From Tetramitus jugosus (lineage: Eukaryota > Protista > Heterolobosea), in NCBI GenBank assembly GCA_937625935.1, contig OW569349.1:604303-668302 (forward strand): 64,000 nucleotides of DNA. Reading direction: 5' to 3'. Below the pieces are notes generated by a model. That model made no database searches and was not told the DNA's origin. It saw only the letters and a program-made list of their open reading frames with translations. Each line of letters starts with the position of its first letter. Position 1 is the stretch's first letter. Shown in pieces: positions 16,365 to 60,708 of the stretch. The position numbers and the translations under genes are program-made.

Positions 16365-17645
16365 AAACTCTGTGAATACTTGTGCTCTCTATGAGATCAC
16401 ATCTTGGAAGAGCAATCCTGTCGCAGCTCCAATAAAAAACAGGATGAGAATTTAACAACACTTTAACCTTTCTTGATAGCAACAAGGAGAATAGGTGAAC
16501 TCGAATCTCGAAAAGTAACTACCTGAGGAAATTGTGACGTCGACAATAGTTGCTATGTATACCTTAAGATAACCATAGGTATCTCATTCAAGATGCAAAC
16601 GGCTTTGCGTGTACGGGTTGTAACACTGTTGTCGATATCCGAGTAATAACAGAGGCAGTATGAAAACGCTGTGACAGTAAGAGTGTTTGAATTGTGAGCG
16701 GGTTCTTTGCTTCTAGAATGCTTTACTCATCGTACAACGTTCTCGCAAAGTTTTGACGTCATGAACATCATTGGAATTGGTTGCTCAGCTCCACATCGAT
16801 GATCCAAGAAAAAGTGTTCTGTTGTTTAAAAGATGAAATGGGACAGCAACTCGGAATAGAGCGCGATCCCACAAGCCACTTTGTGACTTTGAACTGTGAA
16901 GGTTTGTTCAACTTGGTAGTGATTCGAATAAAATTCTCGATTCATCAGTGCAGCTTAAATCCTCAGCTAACACATGACTCCTTTCCCGAGCAATTATGGT
17001 TTCACTGAGGATTTTCCGAGATTGAAGTACCGATTACTTGGAACGATTCGACAGTAACTCGAGATCGGTGTGCTTCATTGAAGTTAAAAGGCATTGTATG
17101 CTAATGAGAAGACATCCAGCAACACTTTTATCTCCCATACAGACAATCAGACTCAAGCCTCCGCCGGGTTCTCGTTTTCTGTCGTTGCTCAGATCTGGTG
17201 GAGAGGGTGAGAGTTTTTTTGGCTCTTTTTTTTAATAAAGTGGCTCTCCACTTCACTCAGTTCGTCGAGTGATATTGAGACCGTTTCATTGTAAGCAACA
17301 GTACAATTTTTTGCTTTTAAAGTTGCTGCTCTTCTCACTCATGACTTTCAGCAGCACTCGCAACAAAAACACCATAACAGCTACCACCAGCAATACACAA
17401 TGCCACAAGAGCTTTAGGCCACAAGCATCATGTCATCAAAATCATTGATCGAAGAACCAGTTCCCACTACCAATGACCTACAACAACAAGAAGAAGAGCA
17501 ATATATCCGGTTCAATCTCGGGCACGAAATGAACTAGGTGAGCTTGAGAAGTGCTGATAGCTGTTTAGAGCTCGTTTCCATACTGACCAATGGAACGTCA
17601 AGTTGTCGCCTGCCAAGTCCATCATTGCTTAGAGTCGGCGGCCAA

Positions 17646-17759
17646 TTTTTTTTTCCATACAACAGTTGCCACTTTATTCAATTCACTACTATGAGACATG
17701 TCGTCACTCAGGACCGCGGGTTCTGAGCTATTGCGCAGGTCTCTTTAGCTAACGAGGTC
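17646..17759 (-). mobile_element. 114-bp 5'-truncated non-LTR retroelement 3' end (element A) upstream of 5S rRNA copy 1
   Basis: Its reverse complement aligns with the 3' end of element B (ORF2 stop CAATAG, hairpin GCTCAGAACC.., AATAAA, GTTGTATGG, A9). Perfect 11-bp TSD TCGGCGGCCAA at 17635-17645 and 17760-17770. Confidence 0.9.
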
Positions 17760-17794
17760 TCGGCGGCCAAACGTTGTGAAAAAACAAGGTAAAT

Positions 17795-17914
17795 GTCTAC
17801 GTTCATACAATGGTGGAACCACCTCTTCCCATTTCGAATAGAGAAGTTAAGCACCATCTGGCTGAGTTAGTATTGAGATAGGAGACTACTCGAGAACCCT
17901 CAGTAATGTAGGCT
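17795..17914 (+). rRNA. 5S rRNA gene (dispersed copy 1, intact)
   Basis: GTCTACGTTCATAC...GAAGTTAAGC...GTTAGTA...GGAGAC...TGTAGGC, about 119 nt. Helix I GTCTAC/GTAGGC. Followed by a TTTT Pol III terminator. Confidence 0.95.
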
Positions 17915-17989
17915 TTTGCAATTTTGTTGCCCAACATCAACCGAGAGCGAGCCGTAGTCAGATGCGGGACAAATTAATGCCCTTTGCTG

Positions 17990-18369
17990 GGACGTGTGGT
18001 CAACCGTCATTGAATTTTTGTGGCACTCGAGAATGGCTTCAATTGAGCTACACGTGCCAAGGAATCAATCAATTCAAATTCAATCGATTGCTCATGTCCA
18101 ACAAGGTGAGAAAACCCAAGAGGGCATTGAACAATAAAGAAATTAACAACTGGTATCGATTGGGAAGACGAACATTGTTTAATGTTCAATTATACAATCG
18201 TAATGTAGTGGATAAGCATTTTCAATACTTGGAAGGCGTTCACACTCGATTATTGTTATCAAATAACAAACAAAGCATTTATCCATTTGGTTGGCATTCA
18301 CACATTGAATATGGCTGGTTGTACGCAAATTACAGACGATGCAATCATTCATTTGAAAGCTATTCATAC
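17990..18369 (+). pseudogene. Truncated, frameshifted paralogue of the F-box/LRR gene at 19852-20928
   Basis: FCGTREWLQLSYTCQGINQFKFNRLLMSNK is nearly identical to FCDTREWLQLSYTCKGINQFKFNRLFMSNK. Degenerate LRRs follow, then an abrupt junction with 5S copy 2. Confidence 0.85.
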
Positions 18370-18484
18370 ACATTACTGAGGGTTCTCGAGTAGTCTCCTA
18401 TCTCAATACTAACTCAGCCAGATGGTGCTTAACTTCTCTATTCGAAATGGGAAGAGGTGGTTCCACCATTGTATGAACGTAGAC
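18370..18484 (-). rRNA. 5S rRNA copy 2, 3'-truncated (lacks terminal AGGC and the T-run terminator)
   Basis: Exact reverse complement of 17795-17909 (115 nt identical). Confidence 0.92.
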
Positions 18485-18522
18485 ACCATTAATGAATAAT
18501 AGCCCTATGTCCGCGTGTTCCA

Positions 18523-19288
18523 GAAGTGTTGATAGGTGATAGAGCGTTGAGCAACACAAATGTCAGAGAGGGTCGAGAGGAGCATCTCGTGCAGATGAGG
18601 CAAAATCGATTGAATCTGAGCCTGAATGGATGTTGGAGGCTGAATTACAGAAAGTAAGTGAGTGGAATGAATTCCTCAAGTGCCCGTTCGGTCTAGAAAG
18701 AAATGAACTGTGGTTTTACCACCAAGTCAGAAGTGGTACGCTCCACACAAAGACTGTACTGCGTGACTTGTATGAGCCGTTGATAGAGATCATGTGTGCT
18801 CACTGCGGGAGCGCGCCAGAGACTATTGCCCACCTACTAGTGGAATGTGATGAAGCCAAAAGGGCAAGAAAGGAACTGGTTGAGGAATTCAAGGCCAAAT
18901 TGGACAAGCTGGAGTTTATGAGGCCAGCCAAGTTAAAGATATGGTTCGATGTTGTGGTTTACGATGACGGGAAATTGGTACCGCTAAGTCCAAGTCGTTC
19001 CACTGAAGAAATCCTGGCAGGGTTAATGGGAAAAGAGGATGACCAGAAGGATGTGTTGATGAAGGAGCTGGTTGTGCACGGTCGCAAGAAGAGGGAAACA
19101 AAAGTTAAAAGGCTGGTGAATGCAATGAAGAGGTCTTGCATCAAACGGTTACACAAAGTCTGGAGAGACTCAGTAGCGAAGAGATGTGAACAATAGCTCA
19201 GAACCTGCGGTTCTGAGCGACAACACGTCTCACTGTAGTGTATAGAATAAAGGGGCAACAAATGTTGTATGGAGGAAAAAAAAAAAAA
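18523..19288 (+). mobile_element. 766-bp 5'-truncated LINE (L1/Tx1-type ORF2 C-terminus, element B) upstream of 5S copy 2
   Basis: ORF 18630-19196 contains the zf-RVT-like motif CAHCGSAPETIAHLLVEC. 3' UTR has a hairpin, AATAAA, GTTGTATGGAGG and A13. Perfect 14-bp TSD GTCCGCGTGTTCCA at 18509-18522 and 19289-19302. Confidence 0.92.
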
Positions 19289-19302
19289 GTCCGCGTGTTC
19301 CA

Positions 19303-19567
19303 ATCTTTAATCTGAAGATGTGGCCATCACCAATGGTATGGTAGCCAATGGAATGGAGTCAAAGCAACCGAAAAGACAGCCAATAATTTATGTGAGTCCC
19401 ATGACTCTCCTTCACCTCTTCACCACAGCAATAGCGAAACAGCAATGAAGCTCTGCGAGTACTATTGAGAATTAATCAGGTGACCAAGGGCCATGGCTCT
19501 TCGGACGATGGCTGAAGAAAACAAAAGACAATAGAGTGAGCAACCGAAATGGTTGTATTAAAAAAAA
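19303..19567 (+). mobile_element. Older decayed retroelement 3' end (element C) stacked behind element B
   Basis: Ends CAATAGAGTGAGCAACCGAAATGGTTGTATT-A8, matching the family terminus. Only a degenerate TSD candidate (TCCAATCTTTAATC / TCCAGCATTTAATC). Confidence 0.55.
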
Positions 19568-19851
19568 TCCAGCATTTAATCCTTGGTGAGCAAGGTAGAC
19601 ATTTGGTTGTAGATAGAAGGATCTGATGATAACGCGGTGAAGATGACAACGGAATCTATGGCTCAAGGAGACGAAGAACCACCATAAGTGTTTAACTTTT
19701 ATGCCTATTTTAAATGACAGCAGTCATCGAATCAATTGAGCCGGCACTTGGGAATGAAACCACATTGTCACCCTTTTCTTGATTCCTTTTTGTCGTAGAA
19801 ACGGAGACGAAACTCATTAACAAGTTCGAGTAGCACAAACAAAGACAGGTA

Positions 19852-20928
19852 TCAGGGCACGTTTCTCTTCATTCCAATAAGAGTTATTGAACTGGACTCA
19901 CAATACTCAACCACCTTTTCGATGAAAACATTGTCTCGTCGACTGTTAGACCAACTGAGCGTGTGAATACCATTCAAATAAAATAATGCCCTCTCTGTGA
20001 TCGATTCTTGATTGCATCCATTCAAATTCAGTGCGTGGATACCTGACAAATGAGAAAACGCATTGTCTGTGATGTTAGTGCAACGACTCATCTTGAGTGT
20101 ATGAATACCAGTCAAATAAGGAAATGCATTGTCTGTGATATTTCTGCAATAACTCATATCAAGACTTTGAATACCAGCCAAGTGACAAAATACATTATCT
20201 GTTATTTGATTGCAATCACTCATATCGAGCGTGTGAATGCCAATCAAATGGGAAAATGCATCATCTGTAACTCGATTGCAAGCATTCATGGAGAGCATGT
20301 GAATTCCAGTCAAATGACAAAATGCACTATCGGTGATTTGATTGCAGCCATTCATGTAGAGCGTGTGAATGCCCTTCAAGTACGGAAATGCCCTGTCTGT
20401 GATATTTTTGCAGTAACTCATATGCAGTGTGTGAATTCCGGTCAAATGAGCACATGCTTTGTCTGTAATTTGGTCACAATAACTCATATGGAGTTCGTGA
20501 ATGCCACTCAAATGACAAAATGCATTGTCTGTGACTCTACTGCCACCGTACATATAGAGTGTATGGATACCTTTCAAAAATTGAAAATGCTCATCCGTCA
20601 CATCCGGATGCCAATTTACCCCAACATTGAACAGCGTTCCTCTGTTCAATCGAAGCCAGTATCCAATTCTTTTAGGACTCAACTCACGTATTAAAGTTCT
20701 TCTCTTGTTGGACATGAATAATCGATTGAACTTGAATTGATTAATCCCTTTGCAAGTGTAACTCAGTTGCAACCACTCCCGAGTGTCACAAAACTCTATA
20801 ATTTTTGACCAGGCATCCCTACAAAGCACAGAATTAATTTCAATCGAACAAAGTCTCCTCCTTCGTTTGGTTTTCACATTCTTACTGTTGGCCTTGCGCT
20901 CCTTCTGCATCATATTCTGTTGTTCCAT
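19852..20928 (-). CDS. F-box-like + leucine-rich repeat protein (about ten 22-aa LRRs)
   Basis: F-box-like LCRDAWSKIIEFCDTREWLQLSYTCK, then tandem LxGIHTLxMSxCxxITDxAFxx repeats with a 66-bp nucleotide period. First ATG near the N-terminus taken at 20928. Confidence 0.85.
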   Translation of the reverse strand: MEQQNMMQKERKANSKNVKTKRRRRLCSIEINSVLCRDAWSKIIEFCDTREWLQLSYTCKGINQFKFNRLFMSNKRRTLIRELSPKRIGYWLRLNRGTLFNVGVNWHPDVTDEHFQFLKGIHTLYMYGGSRVTDNAFCHLSGIHELHMSYCDQITDKACAHLTGIHTLHMSYCKNITDRAFPYLKGIHTLYMNGCNQITDSAFCHLTGIHMLSMNACNRVTDDAFSHLIGIHTLDMSDCNQITDNVFCHLAGIQSLDMSYCRNITDNAFPYLTGIHTLKMSRCTNITDNAFSHLSGIHALNLNGCNQESITERALFYLNGIHTLSWSNSRRDNVFIEKVVEYCESSSITLIGMKRNVP

Positions 20929-21144
20929 TTCTTTTTTTTCTCTGAGCGGGATTTCTGGACCTTGCTCAAGCCAGAAAGGAACTCTTTGACTCCTGTCAAT
21001 GTATTTCGGTCCAGCCAAAAACTTGATCCACGAACCATCCAATAAACATCGATTGCCGCTGATCATCGCAGAGTATGACCAAGCGTATGAACCCTTCAAA
21101 AAGAGGTACTAATGCTTGGAGCTCAATGTTTTCTGCTCAGAACT

Positions 21145-21703
21145 CATGGAAAAGTGAGTCTATTTGATCAAATAGACGGACGGAGTTAAACTTGTAGAAA
21201 ATGCTAGAAACAACCTGTTAGATCGTCAAAGTTGAACATGTACAGCGAGTGTGGGGATCTCGACAAAGCTTTGGAGATGACTCCATGAAACCAGATGATT
21301 CACTCATAGAATGTATGGTGGACATCCTTTCTCGGGCAGAACGTATGGATGAAGCAGAGAAACACGACTCTAATCGAAAAGGATTCAATGATTGCATTGA
21401 GAGCGCTTCTTCGTGCTTGTCGATCTCGTATGGATATCGTCCGAGATGACCGAGCGTTCAACCAAACACAAGTTGGATGTGTCAAGTGAAGAAGAAAAGA
21501 AACGATTATTGAGTTTAAATGGTGAAGAATAGCAATAGGATATGCTCAATTGAAAACTTCAGAGAAAATTGCCAGAATTTTCGAGTTGTGGTGACTGTCG
21601 TCAAGTACATCTCAATGGTTACCGGTCGTGAGCTTATTGTTCGTGACGCGAATCGGTTGCATCACTTTACTCCAGATGGAAGTGCTCCCGCAAAGATTTC
21701 TGG
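21145..21703 (+). pseudogene. Decayed PLS-class PPR protein with E and DYW deaminase domains
   Basis: Colinear frame-shifted fragments: LNMYSECGDLDKAL; CMVDILSRAERMDEAEK; ALLRACR; EEEKKRLL..E(R)IAIGY; NFRV(C)GDC; KYISMVTGRELIVRDANRLHHF..DG; KCSRKDFW. Confidence 0.85.
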
Positions 21704-22002
21704 TGCTCAAAGTATTATGAATCACTCAAGTATCATCGGAGAAGTTCTGAACCATATCTGTTTGAGCACTTCTCGCGAAGCTGTAGAAGTTCTTTCCATT
21801 TCTGCGCCGATATTTACAACAAAAAATTTTGCCCCCAACCATTCTAACCGGTTGACTTTAGGCAACGAACGCGAAGCTTTCAACCTCAAAGAGAGAGATT
21901 TTTGGATACACGAGGTCACACCTTAGTATTTGTAATTATTGTTTCCTATCTAAACGAAGCATCTCCACACCAAGAACCCTCGAATCAAACTCAACAACCA
22001 AA

Positions 22003-22899
22003 ATGCCTGATGAAGATCACAAATTAGAAGCTGCTATGGACTTGATGCAAAGATTGCCTCCTAGCTCCCTTGAATCTAATCTCTCTTTTCTTGTGGCTCT
22101 CGCTCCTGAAATTTCTGAAGATATCCTGTCCAACATTGATGCTCCTCTAAAGGTTGAAACATGTCAGCACACAAAGAAACCTTTCCTTCTGTGTGACTTT
22201 AATCGTGATGGAGACTCCTATAGATCTCCTTGGAGCAACGAGTACCAACCTCAGTTGGACGATGGAGTTACACCATCTGAGAGAATGAGAAAACTGGAAA
22301 TTCACGCAAATGAATTGTTTGGAGAGTATTTTAGACAGTAAGTATCCGCAATGATCAAGGATCATAGCAAACAGTCTACCAATTCACATAGCTAACTGAC
22401 TTTCTTGCGTATTATTTACCATAGATACTATGATAAGACCTGCATCTTCTCTTGCTACTTTTGGCAAGAAGAGGACAATGAGTTCTCTTGCTACATTCTG
22501 GTGAAGAAGGAAACAAAGAGCGAGAGAGGAGTTGAAAATGGTGTCTGGGATGCCACACATGTCGTCAGAGTCGCAAACAGTGAGGACAATGAATCTGTAA
22601 CATATACTCTTGTGAGCACAGTTCTATTGGACTTAGGTATGAAACACAATAACACCAACCTCTCCGGATCTGTACAGAAGCAAGTCACAAAGACGTTTCC
22701 AATTGTCCAATCCGACGAACAGCACTTGGCCAATATGGGAACAATGATCCAGGATGTAGAGAATGTACTGTGGGACAATTTGAACCATGTTTACTTTGGA
22801 AAGACAAAAGAGATTACATCCCATCTGAGAAGCATTCATGAACTGGGTCTGAGAAACAGTCAGTCTCTGATCATGGGCGAACTATTCAACAAGAAGTGA
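22003..22899 (+). CDS. CAPZB: F-actin capping protein beta subunit; intron 22338-22424
   Basis: AAMDLMQRLPP, LCDFNRDGDSYRSPWSN, WDATHV, HLANMGTMI, VYFGKTKEI. Confidence 0.95.
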
Positions 22900-23107
22900 A
22901 ACTTTCTGTGGGGAATGACACCCACAGTAAACAAACAGATTGTATCTTCGCAACCACCAATAAACCCGAGATGCGGAAAAAGTTTCGGCTGAATCATGTG
23001 AAGATGCACACAATCAGATTTCACACGACCACCATAAATACTCTATTAGTAATAGCTAAACTCACACGCAACAACACAAAAAACAAAAACACTACTGCTG
23101 AAACAAT

Positions 23108-24085
23108 ATGCATATCATCAACAACAATCTCAGTCAAAAGTTTGTCATTCATTTGGTCAAACTTCACAAGTATCCCATCTTCAAAATGCTCCAGTTCGAA
23201 GAAGCAGTCATGCGAACAGACACGCATCAACCTCATCACATTTGGATCACTGTCAACGAAGGAACACCATCACCTAGGATTGTCATGGGCAGTGGAGGCA
23301 AAGCAGAAGAGCTATTGCACATGCATCACATTCACAATGATGAATTGCCTGTGATTCGTCGATTCACAGGAGGAGGAACAGTGTTGGTCAATGATCGAAC
23401 CATGTTTGTCTCCATGGTTGGATCGCACGAATTTTTGAAACAATTTGGAATGAAGTGTCATCATGATGAGACAAGAGTGTGGAATCAACCGTTTCCGACT
23501 GATTTGATGCACTGGACGGCAGAGTTTTACCGACCATTGTTTCCCGCGCATTTACGGTTTGATTTACTGGAGAATGATTATGTGTTTCGATTGGATGCGG
23601 AGGATGAGAATTCGATTGCAAAATTCGCGGGAAATGCACAGTACATGACTGGTGGTTTGTACAAGAGATTTTGTCATCATACGAGCTTCTTGTGGGATCA
23701 TGATCACAGTGAAATGGAAAAGTATCTGACACTTCCGAGCAGGAGACCAAAGTACAGAGAAGCTCGAACCCATGGATCCTTTTTGACCAATTTGAGTCGA
23801 GTCAACTGGAAGACACCAGAAAATTTTGCAGCTCAAGATGCCTCTGCAACGACAGACACTGTACAGAACCCGTTCTTACAATCTGTGTTGAAACGTGTGC
23901 ATCAACTGAGTGAAACAGATTGGAGAGAGCATGTGGAGGATGTGCAGGAGCATTTTGATCAGAATCAATTTGAGCAAGTAAGAGAAGAGTACATGTGGAG
24001 AGAGAACAAACTACGGAGAAACAATTATCATTATCATCCAGATTCATCGATACAGAATCAGATTGATCTGTTGCATCAGGACTAA
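23108..24085 (+). CDS. Lipoate-protein ligase-like (BPL/LplA/LipB catalytic domain)
   Basis: IRRFTGGGTV, ENDYV, KFAGNAQY, HHTSFLWD, PKYREARTHGSFL. Confidence 0.88.
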   Translation: MHIINNNLSQKFVIHLVKLHKYPIFKMLQFEEAVMRTDTHQPHHIWITVNEGTPSPRIVMGSGGKAEELLHMHHIHNDELPVIRRFTGGGTVLVNDRTMFVSMVGSHEFLKQFGMKCHHDETRVWNQPFPTDLMHWTAEFYRPLFPAHLRFDLLENDYVFRLDAEDENSIAKFAGNAQYMTGGLYKRFCHHTSFLWDHDHSEMEKYLTLPSRRPKYREARTHGSFLTNLSRVNWKTPENFAAQDASATTDTVQNPFLQSVLKRVHQLSETDWREHVEDVQEHFDQNQFEQVREEYMWRENKLRRNNYHYHPDSSIQNQIDLLHQD

Positions 24086-24154
24086 TAGGAGGATTACAAA
24101 AGTCGAGTAAAATTTTACATACAATCGTGAATACAATTACAGTGTCATTCTCGT

Positions 24155-26148: not shown

Positions 26149-26306
26149 AAAAATCAAATTGTTAAACGTTTGAGGCTTATTTGCTCTTATGATGGCAATC
26201 TGTCAAGAAGAAGGTTGAAAATCTCCAGAAGTTGCGTATGAAGATCCTAATTGTCCACTCCGAATGGAGTGTTCAATCTCGATCCGTACTTTGCTGGCTT
26301 GTCGGT

Positions 26307-52677: not shown

Positions 52678-52920
52678 ATGCAAGATTCTTATCTTTCAAT
52701 TTGTACATTGTTGTCCGAACCTGCTGGACTGTTGTAATCCCCTATAAAGAATCCTTTAATCCCTATGAATTCTAAAGTCAGTTGTAGTGCGGTGTTAGCC
52801 CTTGCTTGGTCCATAAATGGCTCGCAGCGCAACAGACGTTGTGTTGACTACAGACGCAATTTCTGAGCGGGTGTTTGTTCTTCTCTCCAACTGCAATAGA
52901 AAAACTAACCCGACTCAATA

Positions 52921-53388: not shown

Positions 53389-53800
53389 TTGAACTGTGCA
53401 CAAGCTAAACTCGACCAAAACTAGTCAACAATGAACCAATAATTTTCATGAAATGCTTTTGATTTGTTTCTGTGGCGGAGTTCTTTTGGGGTCAAGGGGA
53501 AGAAAAACACAATCCGCGTAATTACATAAGGATACCGATTGTCGCGCTTTTGAGAGGTGATAAGCGTTGACTTTTTGACTCTCCCTTGACCAAAAAGCCG
53601 CTGGCAAGAGATTGCGCGATGTAGTTCAATTGTACTATTTGGGACTCGATCCTAAAAATGAGGTTGCTCTTTCCTCCCCTGAAGGAACCAAATTCATGTC
53701 AACAGTGCCATATTCACACCCCTTCATCCATGATGTTGAGTGATTCTTCTCACAAGCAAACAAGAACAATCTCAGAACCAAACCGAACCAAATCATTATC

Positions 53801-56800
53801 ATGGTGTCTACTGCCAACAGCAATTCTGCTGCGGATAGCAGTACTACTGGTACGACAAACAACCAGACCATTGTGCGTAAGCCGTTCATCCAAGTCGTTC
53901 AAGAATGGACGGCTGCCATTGACCAGAAATTGAAACCTGTTGTGCTCCAGAACAACCATTCCTCTGAATTACCAAAGTTGGTTCCGATGGAAGATGATCG
54001 TTCTTTTGAAGAACTACTGGCTCTCATGAATGACCAAACCACTACAAGTTCTCAATTTTTTTTCGCTTGTCGGAACGGTAGTGATTCAGTGTCTCTACAG
54101 TTGTTTAACCACTTGATTGAGACTCGCAGTAGTGACAACGGTTTGTTATCTGTGAGTAAGATGACAGACAAAGAAAATTCTAATTGCACTCTCATGCATG
54201 TTTGTGCACAAAGAGATAAGATTCAATGCATGGAGTTCTTATTATCTCTCAACATGTCAGTAGATGTGCTCGATTCAGTGTCTGCCACACCACTGCACTA
54301 TGCAGTATCTCAGAACAATCATGAATCTACTCTGTTTCTCTTGAGCAAAGGTGCAAACATCAATGCAAAAGACTCCTACTCCAAGTTTCCTCTGCTCATT
54401 GCACTCAAACATAAGCATTATGCCTTAATGGAATTACTGGCCCCCTTTCGGCCTGATGTTCATCAGAGATTATACAAAGGCAATACACTCTTGCATAATA
54501 TGGCCGAGGAAGGTGACATCATTGCAGTGAGACTTCTCGTTGAAAAATTGAATGCATCTCCTCTGAGAAAGAACAATGAAGAAGAGAATGTACTTTATAA
54601 CGCTCTTCCTTATGTTGACATTGTTCAATATCTGGCCGTCCACTTTGCTTCCAAGGGTTTGGATCGCATGCTCTGCAACATCAACACGTCTGGCAAAAGC
54701 ATACTACACAAGTGTGGAACTGATGGGCACATTGATAATGTTTTATTGCTCTTCAAGTATGTAAATGTTTCCGAGCTCAACCAGAAACAGATTGAATCAT
54801 TATTGAACAGCATGGACAAGAAGGGGGAGACACCACTGGTTTTAGCCGTGAAAAACTACAGAAAGGAGCTAGTACGGTTCTTAGCCGAGTGTATTGAGGT
54901 TGAATTGAATGAAGGAGATTCAAGTGGTGCAACTGCTCTTCAAACAGCGGTAAGTACGACTGATAAGGATATGATCAATACACTCTCAAAGGCAGGAGCT
55001 TCTCTAAAGCCAATTAATAGACATGATGAGAAATCAGAACAGAATAACTGCTTAGCTTTCTTAAGTAGTATGACTACTACTCTAGTGCTACTACTATCAT
55101 TCATCTCTATCATATGCATTATAAGCATGGCTGGTATTTCTCTTGGATTTTATGGAAGAAGTATAGGGCGAGAGACAAAGAGTGCAAGAGACGACTCTTT
55201 TAAAGAGGTAACCGACTATCTAACTAGCGAAATCTCACGACATACAGTTTCATCTCTCTCAGCTATCTCTGCATTTCAAACTAATCTCATTGACACGAGT
55301 GGCTCGCTTCAGAATGCTTTGGAGTTTTCCTTCACTATGCTTCAGTCAATATACAATGAGTCTGATTTCACAATTGATGTGTACATTGGTTCTCATACGG
55401 GAGACCAAGTTGGTGTGATTGCAGCTTTTAATGCTCCTGTCGATGTTTGGACACTGTATGCTAACAAATCTCTATTTGAACATCACAAGGCTCCATCTAT
55501 CTGGGATCAAGATTTGAACGAAATCTTAACATCAGGAACACTTTTTTACATGAATGCATCCGAATTTGACAAATTTGGACCTTTTTATCAAGTTGCCAAT
55601 GATTCATTAGGAGCTGCTTGGACTCCTTCCTTTGCACAATTATCGTTCCCTGGTTCTCTTTTTGTTTCCTTTATGACTTCAGTGAGAGATCCTGTAACAA
55701 ATCAAATGCAATTATACATGGGTAGTGATATCACAACAGAAACCATTTCACGGTTTTTAAACCAGAAATCGATTGAGTGGTCGAGCACAATTGTAATTAT
55801 GGAAAAATCGACAGGGTATCTAATCAGTACTAGTGATCCACAATTTCTGGTTTATACAACTGACGACACGACGATTCATCGATTGAATGGAACGACTGGT
55901 GGAAATGAAGTCATCAAGAAAATGTTGAGTTATTCAAGACAAGAGTTTGGCCAAAAACTGGAGAAAGTGAGATCTAACGCTTATGGATTGTTCGAGCATC
56001 AAAAAAGATACTACCTCCTTAACATTGGAGAGTTAAAGGATAAATATGGTCTGGATTGGTTTATAGTGCAAGCTGTACCTAGAGATCTCTTCTTTAGAGA
56101 TTTCAAAATTGCGATTGGATCCATGATTGGTCTAACTTGCATATTGCTCTTTGTTGGAGTGATTGTATCTGTGGGGTCTTCTTTCCTTTTTATGGCTCCA
56201 TTGAAGAGGCTGTCAGCTCTGGCAGAAGAAATCAAATTATTGCAATTGGAACAAGTGGAGAAAAAGTTAGCTCGAGACATTTCTTTCTTTTCCGAGATAA
56301 GAAGCTTACAGAGTTCGTTCGGATCAATGTCTACAAGATTGAAACAGTTTCGACAATTTATTCCAGAACACATTTTGGCTGTGATTGAAACTGAAGTCGC
56401 TCACAAGGAGATCCTAAGACAAGAAAGCAATTCTCTTACCATCAAGAAGAGTTCATCCAAAGAGTCCTCGGTTAAGAAAGGGGAAGTGGAGCAGAATACC
56501 ATGTATGAATCATGTTCTGATACGCTCATCTCTACAGTCCATGCAAACTATCATTCCAAGGGTTTGGTGACAAATGCACTAACTTCAGGTTTAGTCAGTG
56601 GAACTGTGTCTGTGATGACTATAAAGTTCGACGACATGTCACAAATCTTGGAGTCATATTCGATTGACGATGTCAATGATGCCATGAAAGATCTATTAAC
56701 TGCAATTAAGGACAAAATTAGAGAATCAAATGCTCAATTGGTCTCTCACACACACTCTCATGCAGTTATCTCCTGGAATACGTTGATCTCGCAGTCAGAT

Positions 56801-57349
56801 CATCGAATTAGAGCCATACGGACGGCTCTTGGTTGTCAGAAATCTGTTTTAGGTTTACAGGAGGCTTGGAGAATGAGAGGTTTTCCTCTTTTGAACATTC
56901 AAATCGGATTGAGTTCAGGTGCATCATTCTACGGAAACATAGGATCCGATTCAACCAAAATATTTACTGTGATAGGAAGAGCAGCCAACGAATCCAACAC
57001 TGCATGTCTTTTAAATGAGTCTTGGGGTACAAGAATTCTGGTGTCTCACAATATTTATCAAGCAGCAAAAGATTCTTTCTTCTTGCGTCCTATTGACAAA
57101 ATTACAGATGAATTGCGCATCTATGAACTGGGAGAAACTAGAAGCACAGATGAATGGAGCCACGAATTGTCGCAGGATATTACAAAAGAAAACGATATTT
57201 GGTTTGAGTATACAAGGGGCTTCAAGTGTTTTGATAGAAGAGATTATGAGCAAGCATTCGTTATTTTCTCAGAATACTTGTCCAAATATCCATTTGATGC
57301 TGTTGCTCAGATCATGGTCGATAAGTCGAGAACGATGTGTGAACTCTAA
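53801..57349 (+). CDS. Ankyrin repeats - TM - Cache-like sensor - TM - HAMP - class III nucleotide cyclase-like receptor (probably catalytically degenerate)
   Basis: Ankyrin motifs (TPLHYA, GETPLVLA) and two TM helices flanking an extracellular domain (WTPSF, LDWFIV..VP). Then HAMP (PLKRLS..SEIRSLQSSF..M..L..F..FIP) and a cyclase fold (IQIGLSSG..FYGNIGS..FTVIG). Confidence 0.88.
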   Translation: MVSTANSNSAADSSTTGTTNNQTIVRKPFIQVVQEWTAAIDQKLKPVVLQNNHSSELPKLVPMEDDRSFEELLALMNDQTTTSSQFFFACRNGSDSVSLQLFNHLIETRSSDNGLLSVSKMTDKENSNCTLMHVCAQRDKIQCMEFLLSLNMSVDVLDSVSATPLHYAVSQNNHESTLFLLSKGANINAKDSYSKFPLLIALKHKHYALMELLAPFRPDVHQRLYKGNTLLHNMAEEGDIIAVRLLVEKLNASPLRKNNEEENVLYNALPYVDIVQYLAVHFASKGLDRMLCNINTSGKSILHKCGTDGHIDNVLLLFKYVNVSELNQKQIESLLNSMDKKGETPLVLAVKNYRKELVRFLAECIEVELNEGDSSGATALQTAVSTTDKDMINTLSKAGASLKPINRHDEKSEQNNCLAFLSSMTTTLVLLLSFISIICIISMAGISLGFYGRSIGRETKSARDDSFKEVTDYLTSEISRHTVSSLSAISAFQTNLIDTSGSLQNALEFSFTMLQSIYNESDFTIDVYIGSHTGDQVGVIAAFNAPVDVWTLYANKSLFEHHKAPSIWDQDLNEILTSGTLFYMNASEFDKFGPFYQVANDSLGAAWTPSFAQLSFPGSLFVSFMTSVRDPVTNQMQLYMGSDITTETISRFLNQKSIEWSSTIVIMEKSTGYLISTSDPQFLVYTTDDTTIHRLNGTTGGNEVIKKMLSYSRQEFGQKLEKVRSNAYGLFEHQKRYYLLNIGELKDKYGLDWFIVQAVPRDLFFRDFKIAIGSMIGLTCILLFVGVIVSVGSSFLFMAPLKRLSALAEEIKLLQLEQVEKKLARDISFFSEIRSLQSSFGSMSTRLKQFRQFIPEHILAVIETEVAHKEILRQESNSLTIKKSSSKESSVKKGEVEQNTMYESCSDTLISTVHANYHSKGLVTNALTSGLVSGTVSVMTIKFDDMSQILESYSIDDVNDAMKDLLTAIKDKIRESNAQLVSHTHSHAVISWNTLISQSDHRIRAIRTALGCQKSVLGLQEAWRMRGFPLLNIQIGLSSGASFYGNIGSDSTKIFTVIGRAANESNTACLLNESWGTRILVSHNIYQAAKDSFFLRPIDKITDELRIYELGETRSTDEWSHELSQDITKENDIWFEYTRGFKCFDRRDYEQAFVIFSEYLSKYPFDAVAQIMVDKSRTMCEL

Positions 57350-57659
57350 GGTCAACAATAATAAATTCTGACTGAGTGAAGGTTTATTGTCATTCACATG
57401 ATCTTGCGACCTTCCCAAAGAACTTGCCTACACAGTGACTCCAAGTTCTTGAAAGGACCACCAATAGGATTGGAATTATCGTTGGGTCCATTGTTTGATG
57501 TGTTCCAAGCAGTAATCATTTTCCTATTGACGTGCGAAAAGGCACTCCTGTTTAAAAATACAAGTTACTCCAGATTGTTCAACTTTATGTGACGAAGCGT
57601 TTCTTCTCTAATTGTTACGGACGGGGCATATACACTGGAGAAGTTGTCTTCACTCCAGG

Positions 57660-58630
57660 ATACACGATTGCTACTAAAGCACATGATTGCTCATTATTGA
57701 CTTGGTTTGTGAGTCCACCTTGAGGGTGGAAGAATCATTCTCGTGATCAAATGGTGGAACCATGTAGTAGGGCCGTCAATGGACACTGGCGTCGTATGAT
57801 ACAGTGATCTGCAAGTCGTTGTAAAGCCTCTATCACTCATGATATCGAGAGCCATCTTTCTTGCAAGTTCGTTATCAAAAAGAGGGTTCATTGAACTCAC
57901 ATAGACACAACCTGCAATGGCACCAATTTCAATCTTGTCCTCGAACTCTTCTTCAATAGCTTTTGCTACACTCTGGAAAAGTTCTGTGCTATTTTCTTGA
58001 TTTGGGCCTGTTTGCTCATCATATCACCCAGTGTGACCCTAATACTCCTTTTTTGTTGTCATTGATATGTGGACTCTGAATCTCCTTTTCGGAGTCATCA
58101 TCCTCACATCTCCAATGACTGATTCGTCCTCAATCAACCCACACCTTTTACGGACAACATCTAGCGTCATGCAGCAATTTCCTTCTTCACTGGAGAGAAC
58201 ACTGGAGAAATAACATTCACTTGCTCCAGGATTTGTTGACAGCCTTGAGAGAATCATGTAAGACGTATCGAATGACCGTGTCCTTTAACTTGTTCTCTCC
58301 GCTGAGCACTGCTCGTGTATAGGTTTCATCACCTATAACCACGAAAGCTGGTCTCGCTTCTTGAGCACACTGGCGACCTTCTCAGATCATAGGAGATTCT
58401 TGATGTCGTCCACTGACATGTTCTTCATGCCATGGACGACACTTTGACCCCTTTCTTGTGACATCAACACTGCGTTTGGGTGCAACAGTGCTGTTGCCAG
58501 TCCTACTCTCAACGAATTCAACAAACTTATAGATAGGGTCACCCTTGGCCATCACCATGCAACAAAGCGTTACTGTCCTTTCATCTTGATGACTTGGACT
58601 CGGTTGAGCCGATTATTTGGCAGGCATACG
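57660..58630 (-). mobile_element. Decayed ORF1-only retroelement copy (element F)
   Basis: Colinear nucleotide similarity to 59450-60520 (e.g. GATGTCGTCCACTGACATGTTCTTCATGCCATGGAC; GATTGCTCATT..TTGACTTG..TTGTGAGT), with stops, frameshifts and deletions. Confidence 0.85.
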
Positions 58631-58639
58631 CAACAGGAT

Positions 58640-59400
58640 TCATTCTCTTTTTGGAATGTTGCGAGGGCCTTCGCTACCATCGGGAGCATCATTGGTGAAG
58701 TCAGATGGTTCCGTAGCCCTAGCAAGTTGATAGGACCTACGGAGAACCCCTGACTTGATACTGGCCAATCTTGCTGGCAACTGTATCACCAACGGCGACA
58801 CGTACTGATCTCTTCTTGTTCGTTGAGTTGGGGTTACTGAGATCCAACTCAAGTATCTTCATTGGTGGTTGTGCTTCTTGCACGATCCACCATGATTGCT
58901 CGAGCAGCAATCTCTTTCTTGAACACCTCGGAGGTGCTCAATACTGCTCGAGGATTGCTCTGTTACGAGCATCCTCATCATTGGTGTTGGTGGTTGGCTC
59001 TTGGCTGGACGTAGTTGGAGTGGCGGGATGCGACTCTGGCATGATCGACTCCAGTCATCGGCCGGAGACGGAGTCGAAGGTTCGAATTCGGAGATTCGTT
59101 CCGGTGTCCTTTGTTGTGCCGAGCATGGCCTTGATGTCGTCCTCCGTCTTTCCTTTGACAACATGGAGGACGACCTTCTTGGCACAATCTACGTTGTGCT
59201 TGAGTGCTTGCAGCCACTCACCTTCTTGTTGTGGTTGAAAAATTCAACAAATGGGTAAATGTTGTCATCAACAACAGTTACCCACACAACAAACCTCTTG
59301 GGGCCTTTCTTGATGACTTGGACCCTGATGAGCCATTCACCAAAATCTGAGCCAATCTTCTTTGCCAAGGCAGCCTTGGGTCACCTGTAAGGGGATGTAA
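58640..59400 (-). mobile_element. Decayed, more divergent ORF1 retroelement copy (element E)
   Basis: Translates to EWLIRVQVIKKGPKRFVVWVTV..IYPFVEFFN, VDCAKKVVLH..KTEDDIKAML and NKKRSVRVAVG, matching element D ORF1. It starts directly at the left TSD of D. Confidence 0.8.
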
Positions 59401-59415
59401 AATCGCCAGAGCCAA

Positions 59416-60581
59416 TTTTTTTTTCCATACAACCATGTGTGCTTGCGCAGCAAGCACACGATTGCTCATTTATTGACTTGTTTTGTGAGTGACGACCCGT
59501 AGGGCGTCATTCACTCTTCTTCTCTTGTTGTCCCCGACGGTGCACCTACACGTTGGAAGAATCACTCTGTTGAGTGGTTTGGTTGTAACCTTGTAGTAGG
59601 ACCGTCGATGGACACAGAGCCATCTGTTGTTTTTTTCTTGTTTTGGGCCTTGTTGCTCATCAACTCACCCAGTGTGATCCTAGCACTCCTCTTCTTGTTT
59701 TCATTGAGTTGTGGACTCTGAATCTCCTTTTCGGAGTCATCATCCACATCCACAATGACTGGTTCGTGCTCAGTCAAACCATACCTTTTGCGTGCAGCAG
59801 CCAGCGCCAATGCAACAATTTCCTTTTTCACTCTGGCGAACACTGGAGAAGTGGCATTCACTTGCTCCAGAATTTGCCGGTTCTCAGCACTGAGCTGTAC
59901 AACAGGCACTGATGGCAGTGGTGTTGCTACAGTCCTCTGTTCTTCTGCCTCCACTATCTCAGGAGTAGTCTCCATCCTAGCAGTGGCTTGGGCAACTTCT
60001 TGTTCCGGCATTGGAACCGGTTTGTTGCCCCCTTGACCCTTTGTCTTTCCCAATTCCTTGGTGAGTTCTGTGACCTGTCGACGCAGTCCGTCAACCACCG
60101 TCAGCAGCTCCTCGTACATCTTCGTCAACCTCTTGTTGACAGCCTTGAGAGGATCATGTGGTCTCTCGATGTATCGAGTGACCGTGGCCTTTATCTTGTT
60201 CTCTCCGCTGAGCACTGCTCGTGCATAGGTTTCATCACCTATAACCACGAAAGCAGTGTTACGCTTCTTGAGCACACTGGCAACCTTCTCAGGTCCCAGT
60301 AGCTTCTTGATGTCGTCCACTGACATGTTCTTCATGCCATGGACTACCACCTTTCTTGTGCAATCAACACTGCGCTTGGGTGCAGCAGTGCTATTGCCAA
60401 TCCTCCTCTCCTTGTTGAACAACTCAACAAAGTCATAGATGCGGTCACCCTTGACCGTCACCCATGCAACAAAGCGTTGCTGACCTTTCCTCTTGATGAC
60501 CTGGACTCGGTTGAGCCAGTCACTGCCGTATTCCCTCACCAAATTTGTTGAATCACCAGACATGTGATCCCGTTTTTTTCT
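59416..60581 (-). mobile_element. ORF1-only poly(A) retroelement (element D) upstream of tRNA-Ser
   Basis: 15-bp TSD with one mismatch: AATCGCCAGAGCCAA (59401-59415) and AATCGCCAGAGGCAA (60582-60596). Single ORF, then a 3' UTR of about 137 nt ending AATAAA..GTTGTATGG-A9. Confidence 0.88.
59562..60563 (-). CDS. LINE ORF1p-like protein (two RRM-like regions, coiled coil, basic tail)
   Basis: Open 333-aa frame from ATG 60563 with RKVVVHGM...DDIKKLL...AFVVIGDETYARAVL (RRM-like) and a heptad-rich segment. May be slightly 5'-truncated. The ORF1 identity is inferred from context. Confidence 0.65.
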   Translation of the reverse strand: MSGDSTNLVREYGSDWLNRVQVIKRKGQQRFVAWVTVKGDRIYDFVELFNKERRIGNSTAAPKRSVDCTRKVVVHGMKNMSVDDIKKLLGPEKVASVLKKRNTAFVVIGDETYARAVLSGENKIKATVTRYIERPHDPLKAVNKRLTKMYEELLTVVDGLRRQVTELTKELGKTKGQGGNKPVPMPEQEVAQATARMETTPEIVEAEEQRTVATPLPSVPVVQLSAENRQILEQVNATSPVFARVKKEIVALALAAARKRYGLTEHEPVIVDVDDDSEKEIQSPQLNENKKRSARITLGELMSNKAQNKKKTTDGSVSIDGPTTRLQPNHSTE

Positions 60582-60625
60582 AATCGCCAGAGGCAAAAGT
60601 CGCTAATTTATGATCTAATCTATCA

Positions 60626-60708
60626 GCACTCTTGTCCGAGCGGTCAAGGAGCCTGACTAGAAATCAGGTACGGGAAACCGTGCGTAGGTTCAAATCCTAC
60701 AGAGTGCG
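60626..60708 (+). tRNA. tRNA-Ser (anticodon AGA)
   Basis: Acceptor GCACTCT/AGAGTGC with discriminator G. Anticodon arm CCTGA-CTAGAAA-TCAGG, long variable arm ACGG-GAAA-CCGT, T-loop GTTCAAAT, and TTTT terminator at 60713-60716. Confidence 0.97.

What the first reader, a model, noticed from the sequence alone, without database searches (positions are those of the whole stretch)
17635..60708. Position-specific LINE system that targets just upstream of Pol III genes (5S rRNA and tRNA)
Seen: all three Pol III genes have a TSD-flanked, poly(A)-tailed element upstream, on the opposite strand, with its 5' end facing the gene. The spacer from gene +1 to the near TSD edge is 24 bp for 5S copy 1 (17771-17794), 24 bp for 5S copy 2 (18485-18508) and 29 bp for tRNA-Ser (60597-60625). 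The TSDs (11, 14, 15 bp) and spacers differ in sequence, so the target looks positional rather than a DNA motif. I saw no family member near any protein-coding gene away from these loci. Known: Dictyostelium TRE5 LINEs insert about 50 bp upstream of tRNA genes in this orientation through ORF1p-TFIIIB contact, and yeast Ty1/Ty3 also target Pol III genes. Inference: this is an independent TFIIIB/Pol III-tethered safe-harbour retrotransposon in a Discoba-like genome. The extra 5 bp at the tRNA would fit a short pre-tRNA leader, placing the first nick about 24 bp from the transcription start in all three cases.
Basis: partly seen in the sequence, partly recalled or inferred. Interest (0 to 1): 0.95.

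Follow-up and report, generated by a model that had tools for sequence, protein, structure and literature searches.

The report
LINE family that targets Pol III genes
A family of jumping genes (LINE retrotransposons) in this small heterolobosean amoeba genome inserts almost only at a fixed spot a few dozen bases upstream of tRNA and 5S rRNA genes, always head-to-head, closely copying the behaviour known from Dictyostelium TRE5 in an unrelated branch of eukaryotes.

Summary
All three Pol III genes of the window carry a poly(A)-tailed, TSD-flanked element upstream on the opposite strand. Spacers are 24, 24 and 29 bp; TSDs are 11, 14 and 15 bp.

It holds across the genome. The family's 3' end motif occurs 301 times against 3 for a control. 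Of 100 nuclear tRNA/5S genes, 36 have such an end within 7 kb upstream-antisense, against 1, 6 and 3 in the other configurations. Of 22 elements with both junctions readable, none is a clear exception.

The first nick lies 26-30 bp from tRNA genes and 21-25 bp from 5S genes. A second lineage nicks about 10-12 bp further out. tRNA targets share no motif.

A groundwater metagenome holds the exact empty site of one window insertion. Four environmental contigs with relatives show the same geometry.

ORF2 is APE + RT + zinc knuckle, closest in the PDB to L1 ORF2p. ORF1 has an RRM-like domain.

The host is a heterolobosean by one marker, RPN6.

The TFIIIB tether, the pre-tRNA leader and independence from TRE5 remain inferences.

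The scan had already found this system on other DNA of this genome (s1-547744). I found no paper describing it.

The parts
17795..17914 (+). 5S rRNA gene copy 1 (target gene)
   Evidence: Rfam RF00001, 100.4 bits
17771..17794 (.). 24-bp spacer between 5S copy 1 and the first-nick site
   Evidence: Read from the sequence; TSD scan
17646..17759 (-). 5'-truncated element of the GG lineage: 3' UTR only, 114 bp including a 9-nt poly(A). Its 11-bp TSD tcggcggccaa lies at 17635-17645 and 17760-17770.
   Evidence: The exact 3' motif hit at C6:621951(-) corresponds to this copy.
18365..18484 (-). 5S rRNA gene copy 2 (target gene)
   Evidence: Rfam RF00001, 91.3 bits
18485..18508 (.). 24-bp spacer between 5S copy 2 and the first-nick site
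18523..19288 (+). 5'-truncated GG-lineage element, 766 bp. It holds the ORF2 C-terminus with a CCHC knuckle, the 3' UTR and 13 A. Its 14-bp TSD gtccgcgtgttcca lies at 18509-18522 and 19289-19302. The insertion is polymorphic: absent in groundwater-metagenome contigs.
   Evidence: zf-RVT is weak in Pfam. The joint 18508->19289 skips 780 bp with 14 letters shared on both sides, in runs X2 and X3.
19313..19567 (+). Older TT-lineage element fragment, with 3' end ..GGTTGTATT-A8, stacked behind the previous one. Its degenerate TSD matches 11 of 14: tccaatctttaatc at 19299-19312 and tccagcatttaatc at 19568-19581. Before the later insertion its nick lay 34 bp from 5S copy 2.
   Evidence: Read from the sequence. 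Exact motif hit at C6:623854(+). blastn homology over 19396-19567. The stretch 19289-19493 is present in the wild-strain contig without mismatch.
60626..60708 (+). tRNA-Ser(AGA) gene (target gene)
   Evidence: ARAGORN and Rfam RF00005
60597..60625 (.). 29-bp spacer between the tRNA and the first-nick site
59416..60581 (-). ORF1-only (non-autonomous) element with a complete 5' end, 1166 bp. It has an 18-nt 5' UTR, ORF1 at 59565-60563, a hairpin-containing 3' UTR ending GGTTGTATGG, and 9 A. Its 15-bp TSD with one mismatch lies at 59401-59415 and 60582-60596.
   Evidence: The ORF1 model has an RRM-like domain at residues about 61-135.
57668..59400 (-). Stack of older, decayed ORF1-type elements behind the young copy. 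This shows repeated use of the same tRNA docking site.
   Evidence: blastn and tblastn homology; sequence

Best explanation
**What it is.** This is a family of APE-type non-LTR (LINE) retrotransposons with several sub-lineages.
- Autonomous copies are about 5.2 kb. They carry ORF1, then an ORF2 of 1267-1318 aa with APE, RT and a CCHC knuckle.
- ORF1-only derivatives of about 1.2-1.3 kb also exist. They share the 3' terminus ..GTTGTAT(GG/T)-An.

**How it integrates.** Copies integrate by target-primed reverse transcription at a fixed position upstream of tRNA and 5S rRNA genes. The element's 5' end always faces the gene's 5' end.
- The first nick is on the gene's sense strand. In the GG lineage it lies 26-30 bp before mature tRNA +1 and 21-25 bp before 5S +1.
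- In the TT lineage it lies about 10-12 bp, roughly one helical turn, further out.
- The second nick is 11-18 bp further upstream. This puts the element's 5' end at 42-46 bp from tRNA genes and 35-40 bp from 5S genes in the GG lineage.
- In the TT lineage the 5' end lies at 50-53 bp from 5S genes and at 57-58 bp from the single resolved tRNA (Tyr).

**Why position, not sequence (inference).** The same sub-lineages hit tRNA genes and 5S genes, which have unlike flanks and different internal promoters. The site is therefore read from the Pol III pre-initiation complex. TFIIIB, the factor the two gene classes share upstream, is the most likely landmark. Within the allowed window the endonuclease only weakly prefers to cut 5' of an A.

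**Consequences.**
- The TSD re-creates the native -25 to -40 region next to the gene, so the gene and the docking site survive.
- The site is therefore hit again, giving head-to-tail stacks that reuse the same TSD.

**Shown:** anatomy, geometry, genome-wide specificity and recent mobility.

**Inferred:** the protein tether, which element protein makes the contact, and the leader-length explanation of the tRNA/5S offset.
For: **Window anatomy.**

**Copy number.**
- There are 301 terminal-motif hits against 3 for the control.
- More than 150 ORF2 C-terminus matches occur at 30-100% identity.

**Coordinate cross.** I used 100 nuclear Pol III genes and 238 listed element 3' ends. 36 genes have an end within 7 kb upstream-antisense. 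The other configurations give 1 (upstream-same), 6 (downstream-antisense) and 3 (downstream-same). Chance predicts about 3 each.

**Junctions.**
- tRNA genes, GG lineage: 15 sites, spacers 26-30 bp, mode 28.
- 5S genes, GG lineage: 8 sites, spacers 21-25 bp.
- 5S genes, TT lineage: 3 sites plus the window copy, spacers 34-35 bp.
- tRNA-Tyr, TT lineage: 1 site, spacer 40-41 bp.

**Element-centred survey.** 22 TSD-resolved copies lay in tiles chosen by element homology.
- 16 lie directly at a Pol III gene.
- 4-5 are stacked behind another copy.
- 1 has its flank off the tile.
- None is a clear exception.

**5S-centred sample.** 12-15 of 30 5S genes carry a canonical upstream copy.

**Same-site reuse.** The same TSD occurs three times at four loci.

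**No motif.** The 16 tRNA sites aligned on the nick share nothing except A at +1.

**Empty site.** X2 and X3 hold the exact empty site with a single TSD copy.

**Environmental contigs.** ORF1 relatives of 42-96% identity sit head-to-head with Pol III genes.
- tRNA-Asn, with the element 5' end about 45 bp away.
- tRNA-Gln.
- A tRNA-like 5' half, about 43 bp away.
- A 5S 5' fragment.

**Proteins.**
- RVT_1 and a weak zf-RVT match in ORF2.
- An APE domain in a 67%-identical relative.
- The same APE segment matches 44 places here, 9 of them in the same 1267-1318 aa open frame as the C-terminus.
- The best PDB match is human L1 ORF2p, E 5e-18.

**TRE5-A parallels, from papers.** Same orientation rule, tandem formation, and an ORF1-only derivative mobilised in trans (PMC5391098). 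Distances are 40-54 bp at tRNA genes and 37-41 bp at 5S genes (PMC5911963).
Against: - No experiment or model here shows any contact with TFIIIB, TFIIIC or Pol III.
- 5S genes do carry a conserved upstream motif, about AAAAYGYGGAAAT ending near -23. It spans the nick sites. For 5S alone, sequence recognition cannot be excluded.
- U6 (2 genes) and 7SL (4 genes) show no nearby element ends. This is not significant (p about 0.07), but it does not support 'any Pol III gene'.
- One decayed ORF1-type fragment lies downstream of the tRNA-Ser in the wrong configuration.
- The tRNA and 5S gene lists are incomplete: 63 and 47 scored candidates.
- The TT-lineage distance at tRNA genes rests on one resolved junction.
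Confidence: 0.85

Rival explanations
1. Sequence-specific targeting. The endonuclease recognises a DNA motif that happens to lie upstream of Pol III genes, such as a TATA-like box or the 5S upstream element. No protein tether is involved.
For: - 5S genes share a conserved upstream motif that spans the nick positions.
- The base after the nick is A in 20 of 27 sites, and many tRNA spacers begin with AT-rich runs.
Against: - The 16 tRNA targets aligned on the nick have no information content above the small-sample background, except A at +1.
- Near-identical copies (98-99% over the 180 bp compared) sit at 5S, tRNA-Leu, tRNA-Tyr and tRNA-Ala genes with unlike flanks.
- AT-rich dinucleotides are everywhere in a 58% A+T genome, yet copies are not.
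Confidence: 0.05
2. Random integration followed by selection. Copies land anywhere, and only those in harmless places next to Pol III genes survive in a gene-dense genome.
For: The genome is compact: long intron-poor ORFs fill the window. Selection against genic insertions must be strong.
Against: - Selection cannot produce a +/-2 bp distance, a single orientation, or reuse of the very same nucleotide position with the same TSD.
- It also cannot explain the absence of copies downstream of the same genes or in other intergenic DNA.
Confidence: 0.03
3. The geometry is real, but the family is not an independent invention. It belongs to, or was horizontally acquired from, the same L1-like lineage as Dictyostelium TRE5, and its targeting was inherited rather than convergent.
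For: The likeness to TRE5-A is very close (PMC5391098, PMC5911963).
- The same orientation rule.
- Nearly the same distances for tRNA and for 5S genes.
- The same APE-RT-zinc-finger ORF2.
- ORF1-only derivatives.
- Tandem stacks.

TRE5 is filed under L1, and this ORF2 is closest to L1 ORF2p among solved structures.
Against: - The nearest full-length proteins among 1.84 billion representatives are at most about 30% identical. The few that carry a name come from scattered eukaryotes: a protosteloid amoeba, a nematode and an insect.
- TRE-like elements were not found in non-dictyostelid Amoebozoa (PMC5006619).
- Dictyostelids themselves evolved TRE5-like targeting a second time, in NLTR-B.
Confidence: 0.25
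4. The tether is not TFIIIB but another part of the machinery shared by tRNA and 5S genes, such as TFIIIC or a Pol III subunit. Yeast Ty1, which uses AC40, is a precedent.
For: - tRNA and 5S genes both depend on TFIIIC.
- U6 and 7SL genes showed no nearby copies.
- Ty1 uses a polymerase subunit rather than TFIIIB (PMC7459421, listed; abstract only read).
Against: - The nicks at about -24 and -40 bracket the region where TFIIIB sits on Pol III genes. This rests on established knowledge, not on a test here.
- TRE5-A ORF1 binds TFIIIB subunits in vitro (PMC5911963, PMC5391098).
- The U6/7SL sample is only 6 genes.
Confidence: 0.3

Closest known systems
Dictyostelium discoideum TRE5-A (tRNA gene-targeted L1-like non-LTR retrotransposon)
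   Same: - Integration upstream of tRNA genes in one orientation only, 5' end to 5' end (PMC5391098).
- Similar distances. TRE5 lies 40-54 bp from tRNA and 37-41 bp from 5S (PMC5911963). Here the GG lineage lies 42-46 and 35-40 bp.
- Also targets 5S genes.
- ORF2 with APE, RT and a zinc finger.
- Variable TSDs and 5' truncation.
- An ORF1-only derivative (TRE5-A.2) mobilised in trans.
- Tandem stacks rather than nested insertions.
   Different: - The host is a heterolobosean (Discoba), not an amoebozoan.
- The 5S targets are dispersed chromosomal genes, not the extrachromosomal rDNA element.
- The 5' UTR is very short, about 18-30 nt, rather than a modular A/B-module 5' region.
- ORF1 has an RRM-like fold, whereas TRE5-A ORF1 is reported to resemble no other ORF1.
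- Two lineages here are offset by about one helical turn.
- Sequence relatedness to TRE5 was not tested.
Polysphondylium pallidum NLTR-B and Dictyostelium purpureum NLTR-A
   Same: These are non-LTR elements unrelated to TREs that independently acquired tRNA-upstream targeting. NLTR-B lies 39-64 bp upstream (PMC5006619, PMC5911963).
   Different: They carry an RNase H domain after the RT. No RNase H was detected in the ORF2 part read here. The hosts are dictyostelids.
Yeast Ty3 and Ty1 (LTR retrotransposons targeting Pol III genes)
   Same: They use the Pol III transcription machinery as a landmark for safe integration upstream of tRNA genes. Ty3 uses TFIIIB (PMC5911963).
   Different: They are integrase-based LTR elements, with no TPRT and no poly(A). 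Ty3 inserts at the transcription start, and Ty1 in a nucleosome-periodic window.
Human LINE-1 ORF2p (solved structures 8SXT, 8UW3, 9K6G)
   Same: It is the best sequence match among solved structures, collinear over APE, linker and RT. ORF1 contains an RRM and a long helix, as L1-type ORF1 proteins do.
   Different: L1 is not position-specific. The identity is low (E 5e-18). The ORF1 domain order differs: here the RRM comes before the long helix.

Membership tests
APE-type non-LTR (LINE) retrotransposon | 3' poly(A) tail, variable-length target-site duplications and frequent 5' truncation (hallmarks of TPRT) | tested here: met
   27 junction pairs have TSDs of 11-18 bp and tails of 5-38 A. Element lengths run from 72 to 1911 bp, all sharing the 3' end. 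An exact empty site was found in another strain.
APE-type non-LTR (LINE) retrotransposon | ORF2 with an N-terminal apurinic-endonuclease-like domain and a reverse transcriptase | tested here: met
   - RVT_1, E 1.5e-18, in L066:1501-3558.
- Exo_endo_phos (23.2 bits) and Exo_endo_phos_2 (22.0 bits), both below Pfam's gathering scores of 24.5 and 27.4, in the 67%-identical relative P0001.
- That APE segment matches 44 places in this genome. Nine of them lie in the same 1267-1318 aa open frame as the C-terminus.
L1 superfamily (L1/Tx1/TRE-like) | RT phylogeny placing the element inside the clade | not tested
   No labelled reference sequences (TRE, Tx1, L1 and others) could be brought in. The only pointers are that the best PDB match is L1 ORF2p and a weak zf-RVT match of 20 bits, below the cut-off of 27.5.
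L1 superfamily (L1/Tx1/TRE-like) | C-terminal cysteine-rich (CCHC) motif after the RT, and ORF1 with RRM and coiled coil | tested here: inconclusive
   - A C-x2-C-x7-H-x4-C motif is visible in the ORF2 C-terminus, but the Pfam score is under threshold.
- The ORF1 model is confident only over residues 70-130. This part is RRM-like, with Z up to 9.1.
- The long helix at 138-176 is of lower confidence.
TRE5-like position-specific integrators (functional class) | Insertion in a narrow window about 40-55 bp upstream of tRNA genes | tested here: met
   The element 5' end lies at 42-46 bp in 15 GG-lineage tRNA sites. It lies at about 43 and 45 bp in environmental contigs.
TRE5-like position-specific integrators (functional class) | Strict orientation, with the element 5' end facing the gene 5' end | tested here: met
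   36 genes have upstream-antisense ends against 1 with upstream-same. 42 canonical adjacencies against 3 in the other orientation occur among 63 genes in the held DNA.
TRE5-like position-specific integrators (functional class) | Dependence on the Pol III transcription complex (A/B boxes, TFIIIC/TFIIIB) and ORF1-TFIIIB contact | not testable with these tools
   This needs a retrotransposition assay and binding tests.
TRE5 lineage (phylogenetic membership) | ORF2/RT groups with Dictyostelium TRE5 elements | not tested

The most novel reading that the evidence does not exclude
The family is an independent, convergent re-invention of TRE5-type docking in a different eukaryotic supergroup. The near-identical distances in the two systems, and the one-helical-turn offset between the two local lineages, would then reflect the conserved geometry of the TFIIIB-DNA complex. 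The two nicks would bracket its footprint, so the TSD would be that footprint.

A further, more speculative step concerns the very short 5' UTR of about 18-30 nt. Because every new copy lands at a fixed distance from a TBP-containing complex, full-length copies may borrow divergent promoter activity from the Pol III gene's upstream region instead of carrying a full internal promoter.
Probability: 0.4. Interest if true: 0.8.

Novelty: new member of a known kind. Interest (0 to 1): 0.65.

Why it matters
Position-specific LINEs that read the Pol III machinery were so far known, among non-LTR elements, only from dictyostelid amoebae (PMC5006619, PMC5911963). I found no report for Heterolobosea or Naegleria in the searchable library.

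A second system, in an unrelated supergroup, shares several features with TRE5-A:
- the same orientation rule;
- almost the same distances at tRNA and 5S genes;
- ORF1-only partners;
- tandem stacks.

This gives a natural comparison for asking what a LINE pre-integration complex recognises on a Pol III gene. It also lets one ask whether the geometry is dictated by TFIIIB.

The system looks recently active. It has intact ORF2 frames, copies 98-99% identical over 180 bp of their 3' ends, and an insertion that is polymorphic between strains.

The two sub-lineages, offset by about one helical turn, offer built-in variants for mapping the determinant. The family also illustrates how mobile elements persist in a 26-Mb, gene-dense genome.

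Tried and rejected
**Steps that led nowhere.**
Long copies could therefore not be traced to their 5' ends. I used coordinates instead.
- The word-indexed protein search with the ORF2 half found only one relative.
- The exhaustive representative search found only short fragments and relatives of at most about 30% identity.
- Cluster look-ups gave almost no names. A labelled RT tree was therefore not possible.
- The Atlas look-ups gave only generic APE-RT clusters for ORF2 and nothing for ORF1.
- My first two homology maps of the tiles were unreliable. Stop-to-stop ORFs ran into neighbouring genes, and antisense ORFs had entered the library. I replaced them with a sense-only library.
The single-protein scan worked.
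- Rfam did not call the truncated tRNA in L095 or the 5S fragment in L096. Those two rest on direct sequence comparison.
- Paper searches for the accession numbers of the related assembly and of the runs found nothing.
- Complex prediction was not used, because no host TFIIIB sequence was available.

**Readings rejected.**
- The 5S or tRNA gene is part of the mobile unit. The TSDs flank the element only, and the empty site keeps the gene.
- Assembly artefact. Independent runs hold both the filled and the empty forms.

Full report
**1. The observation**

Rfam and ARAGORN place three Pol III genes in the window:
- 5S rRNA at 17795-17914 (+);
- 5S rRNA at 18365-18484 (-);
- tRNA-Ser(AGA) at 60626-60708 (+).

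| Target gene | Element | Length | TSD | Spacer |
|---|---|---|---|---|
| 5S copy 1 | 17646-17759 (-) | 114 bp, tail 9 | 11 bp | 24 bp |
| 5S copy 2 | 18523-19288 (+) | 766 bp, tail 13 | 14 bp | 24 bp |
| tRNA-Ser | 59416-60581 (-) | 1166 bp, tail 9 | 15 bp, one mismatch | 29 bp |

In each case the element is on the strand opposite to the gene, and its 5' end faces the gene. By blastn and tblastn with a library of family members, all family homology in the 64-kb window lies at 17646-19567 and 57668-61028.

**2. The elements**

The copies share a conserved 3' end. It holds an AATAAA signal and then ..GGCAAC..TGTTGTATGG followed by poly(A). I call this the GG lineage. A second group ends ..GCAACCG.AATGGTTGTATT(T)-An; I call it the TT lineage.

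ORF2:
- The ORF2 part that I could read (L066:1501-3558, 686 aa) has RVT_1 (E 1.5e-18) and a weak zf-RVT match.
- A 67%-identical relative from another public assembly (P0001, GCA_037189345.1) supplies the N-terminal half. It has weak Exo_endo_phos/Exo_endo_phos_2 matches, both below Pfam's gathering scores, plus RVT_1.
- Its best match among solved structures is human L1 ORF2p, collinear over APE to RT, E 5e-18.
- The APE segment of P0001 matches 44 places in this genome. Nine lie in the same 1267-1318 aa open frame as the C-terminal matches. Intact APE-RT-zinc-knuckle ORF2s therefore exist here.

Full-length size:
- At two tRNA genes, C23:91520 and C18:90744, the APE start lies about 1.35 kb from the gene.
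- The element 3' end at those genes lies 5.25-5.3 kb from the gene.
- This fits a full-length element of about 5.2 kb with ORF1 in front of ORF2.

The tRNA-Ser copy of the window is one of many ORF1-only elements of 1.17-1.33 kb. They have a complete 5' end, an 18-30 nt 5' UTR and their own hairpin 3' UTR, but the shared terminus.

ORF1 has no Pfam or Atlas relative. An AlphaFold model is confident only over residues 70-130. That part is an RRM-like fold: 21 chains score Z >= 8, nearly all the top 50 are RRMs, and the best Z is 9.1. A long helix follows it.

**3. Genome-wide test**

The terminal motif plus six A (GTTGTATKDAAAAAA) occurs 301 times in the 26.35-Mb assembly. The reversed control occurs 3 times.

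I crossed two coordinate lists:
- the 238 listed motif positions;
- the 53 nuclear tRNA genes and 47 5S genes that the genome search scored.

Within 7 kb of a gene, the counts by configuration were:

| Configuration | Genes with an element 3' end |
|---|---|
| Upstream, opposite strand | 36 (19 tRNA, 17 5S) |
| Upstream, same strand | 1 |
| Downstream, opposite strand | 6 |
| Downstream, same strand | 3 |

Chance predicts about 3 per class.

In DNA that I could read (69 tiles, 295 kb), I searched from each element 3' end for its TSD, without using the gene annotation. Of 22 resolved copies in element-selected tiles:
- 16 abut a Pol III gene;
- 4-5 lie in a stack behind another copy that does;
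- 1 has its flank off the tile;
- none is a clear exception.

In a 5S-centred sample chosen independently of elements, 12-15 of 30 5S genes carry a canonical upstream copy.

**4. Geometry**

| Lineage | Gene class | Sites | Spacer, gene +1 to first nick | TSD | Element 5' end |
|---|---|---|---|---|---|
| GG | tRNA | 15 | 26-30 bp, mode 28 | 13-18 bp | 42-46 bp |
| GG | 5S | 8 | 21-25 bp, mode 24 | 11-18 bp | 35-40 bp |
| TT | 5S | 3 | 34-35 bp | 16-18 bp | 50-53 bp |
| TT | tRNA-Tyr | 1 | 40-41 bp | 16-17 bp | 57-58 bp |

- The window itself holds a TT copy at 19313-19567. Its degenerate TSD places its nick 34 bp from 5S copy 2.
- The two lineages thus differ by about 10-12 bp, roughly one turn of the helix.
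- At four loci the same TSD occurs three times, with two elements in tandem. This is what repeated cutting at the same nucleotide would give.

**5. Position or sequence?**

The 16 tRNA targets aligned on the nick show no conserved position except A just after the cut.

5S genes do have a conserved upstream motif. It is present whether or not an element is there, so it is a feature of the gene.

Copies 98-99% identical over the 180 bp compared sit at 5S, tRNA-Leu, tRNA-Tyr and tRNA-Ala genes. What tRNA and 5S genes share upstream is the Pol III initiation complex, not a DNA word.

By TPRT logic, the first nick is on the gene's sense strand at the gene-proximal TSD edge.

The 4-5 bp tRNA/5S offset is real. 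A pre-tRNA leader of that length would explain it, but I could not test that.

**6. Mobility and independent replication**

Contigs of two groundwater metagenome runs (X2, X3) join 18508 directly to 19289, with 14 letters that fit both sides.
- This is the exact empty site of the GG copy at 5S copy 2.
- The same contigs keep the older TT copy behind it without a mismatch.
- The insertion is therefore polymorphic, and the order of events is confirmed.

Searching public collections with ORF1 gave environmental contigs with relatives of 42-96% identity. Every one with enough upstream sequence shows a Pol III gene on the opposite strand, 5' to 5'.

| Locus | Pol III gene on the opposite strand | Distance |
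|---|---|---|
| L098 | tRNA-Asn | element 5' end about 45 bp away |
| L099 | tRNA-Gln | ORF1 start 68 nt away |
| L095 | tRNA-like 5' half with a box A, cut by the contig end | about 43 bp |
| L096 | 32-nt 5S 5' fragment | ORF1 start 77 nt from the 5S 5' end |

**7. Host**

The RPN6 protein of the window is most like those of three heteroloboseans: Willaertia magna (65%), Naegleria fowleri (66%) and Acrasis kona (64%). The next named hits, from plants and fungi, are about 50-57%.
- This is one marker and a best-hit argument.
- No dictyostelid appears among the 120 best hits listed.

**8. Comparison with what is known**

TRE5-A of Dictyostelium shares the following with this family:
- It integrates 40-54 bp upstream of tRNA genes and 37-41 bp upstream of the 5S gene (PMC5911963).
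- It always has its 5' end facing the gene's 5' end.
- It forms tandems.
- It has an ORF1-only derivative mobilised in trans.
- Its ORF1 binds TFIIIB subunits in vitro (PMC5391098).

The present family works like TRE5-A in every respect that I could measure.

Whether it belongs to the TRE5 lineage is open. I could not obtain TRE sequences, and the nearest proteins in a 1.84-billion-protein library are at most about 30% identical. TRE-like elements were reported absent from non-dictyostelid Amoebozoa, and tRNA targeting arose repeatedly within dictyostelids (PMC5006619). I therefore consider convergence more likely than shared descent, at roughly 3:1.

**9. Limits**

- U6 (2 genes) and 7SL (4 genes) show no element ends nearby. 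The target class is tRNA and 5S, not demonstrably all Pol III genes.
- One decayed ORF1-type fragment lies about 60 bp downstream of tRNA-Ser, pointing away. It is unexplained.
- The tether (TFIIIB, TFIIIC or polymerase) and the element protein that makes the contact are inferred by analogy only.
- The scan had already reported this system on other DNA of the same genome (s1-547744 and several first-reader notes).
- This report adds nick-level geometry, the two lineages, the empty site, the environmental replicates and the ORF2 architecture.
- Searches of the held literature found no description of such elements in Heterolobosea or Naegleria.

**10. Verdict**

This is a real, well-supported and recently active Pol III-gene-targeting LINE family. 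It is a new member of a known functional kind, in a new eukaryotic supergroup.

Noticed in passing
window 60765-61100 (+): A decayed, internally deleted ORF1-type element lies about 60 bp downstream of tRNA-Ser. It has the same orientation as the tRNA, with its 5' end facing the tRNA's 3' end. It starts MSTQGQS.., like the L064 subfamily, and has a GGCAAC..-like 3' end near 61080-61100. It is the only copy in the window that breaks the upstream/antisense rule. A TRE3-like downstream habit or a lost target gene are both possible.
   Followed up: partly
upstream of 5S genes, e.g. window 17760-17775 and 18505-18522; tiles listed: Dispersed 5S genes share a conserved upstream element at about -37 to -21. 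It has the form (C/G)AAAAYGYGGAAAT or a CGGCGNCAAA variant, whether or not an element is inserted. It is probably an upstream promoter element of 5S genes in this organism.
   Followed up: partly
window 59416-60581 and loci L060, L088, L080, L017: ORF1-only elements of 1.17-1.33 kb are abundant. They have their own hairpin 3' UTR but the shared GGTTGTATGG terminus, which parallels TRE5-A.2. The window copy has an internal deletion of about 40 codons near the ORF1 N-terminus relative to the others.
   Followed up: partly
G000 C54 and C56: The two contigs carry identical tRNA coordinates: 941, 12773, 14364, 14438 and 44585. They look like two copies of the mitochondrial genome in the assembly.
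   Followed up: no
window 17795-18484: The two 5S genes are convergent and identical over at least 115 bp, forming an inverted repeat with a 450-bp spacer. Elsewhere 5S genes occur as divergent pairs (C1:57053/58194) and as direct pairs (C10:499896/501145).
   Followed up: no
tiles C13_115020 and C39_413348 (L029, L014): tRNA-Glu(TTC) genes carry a 24-nt intron. ARAGORN without the intron option reports them as 'tRNA-???'. The 'tRNA-Gln with an 862-nt intron' call in C14_496655 is a false positive that lies inside an element.
   Followed up: partly
window 60001-64000: The 4-kb composition window 60001-64000 has an unusual composition, with GC skew +0.28 and AT skew -0.20. I read only 60700-62300 and did not examine the cause.
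   Followed up: no
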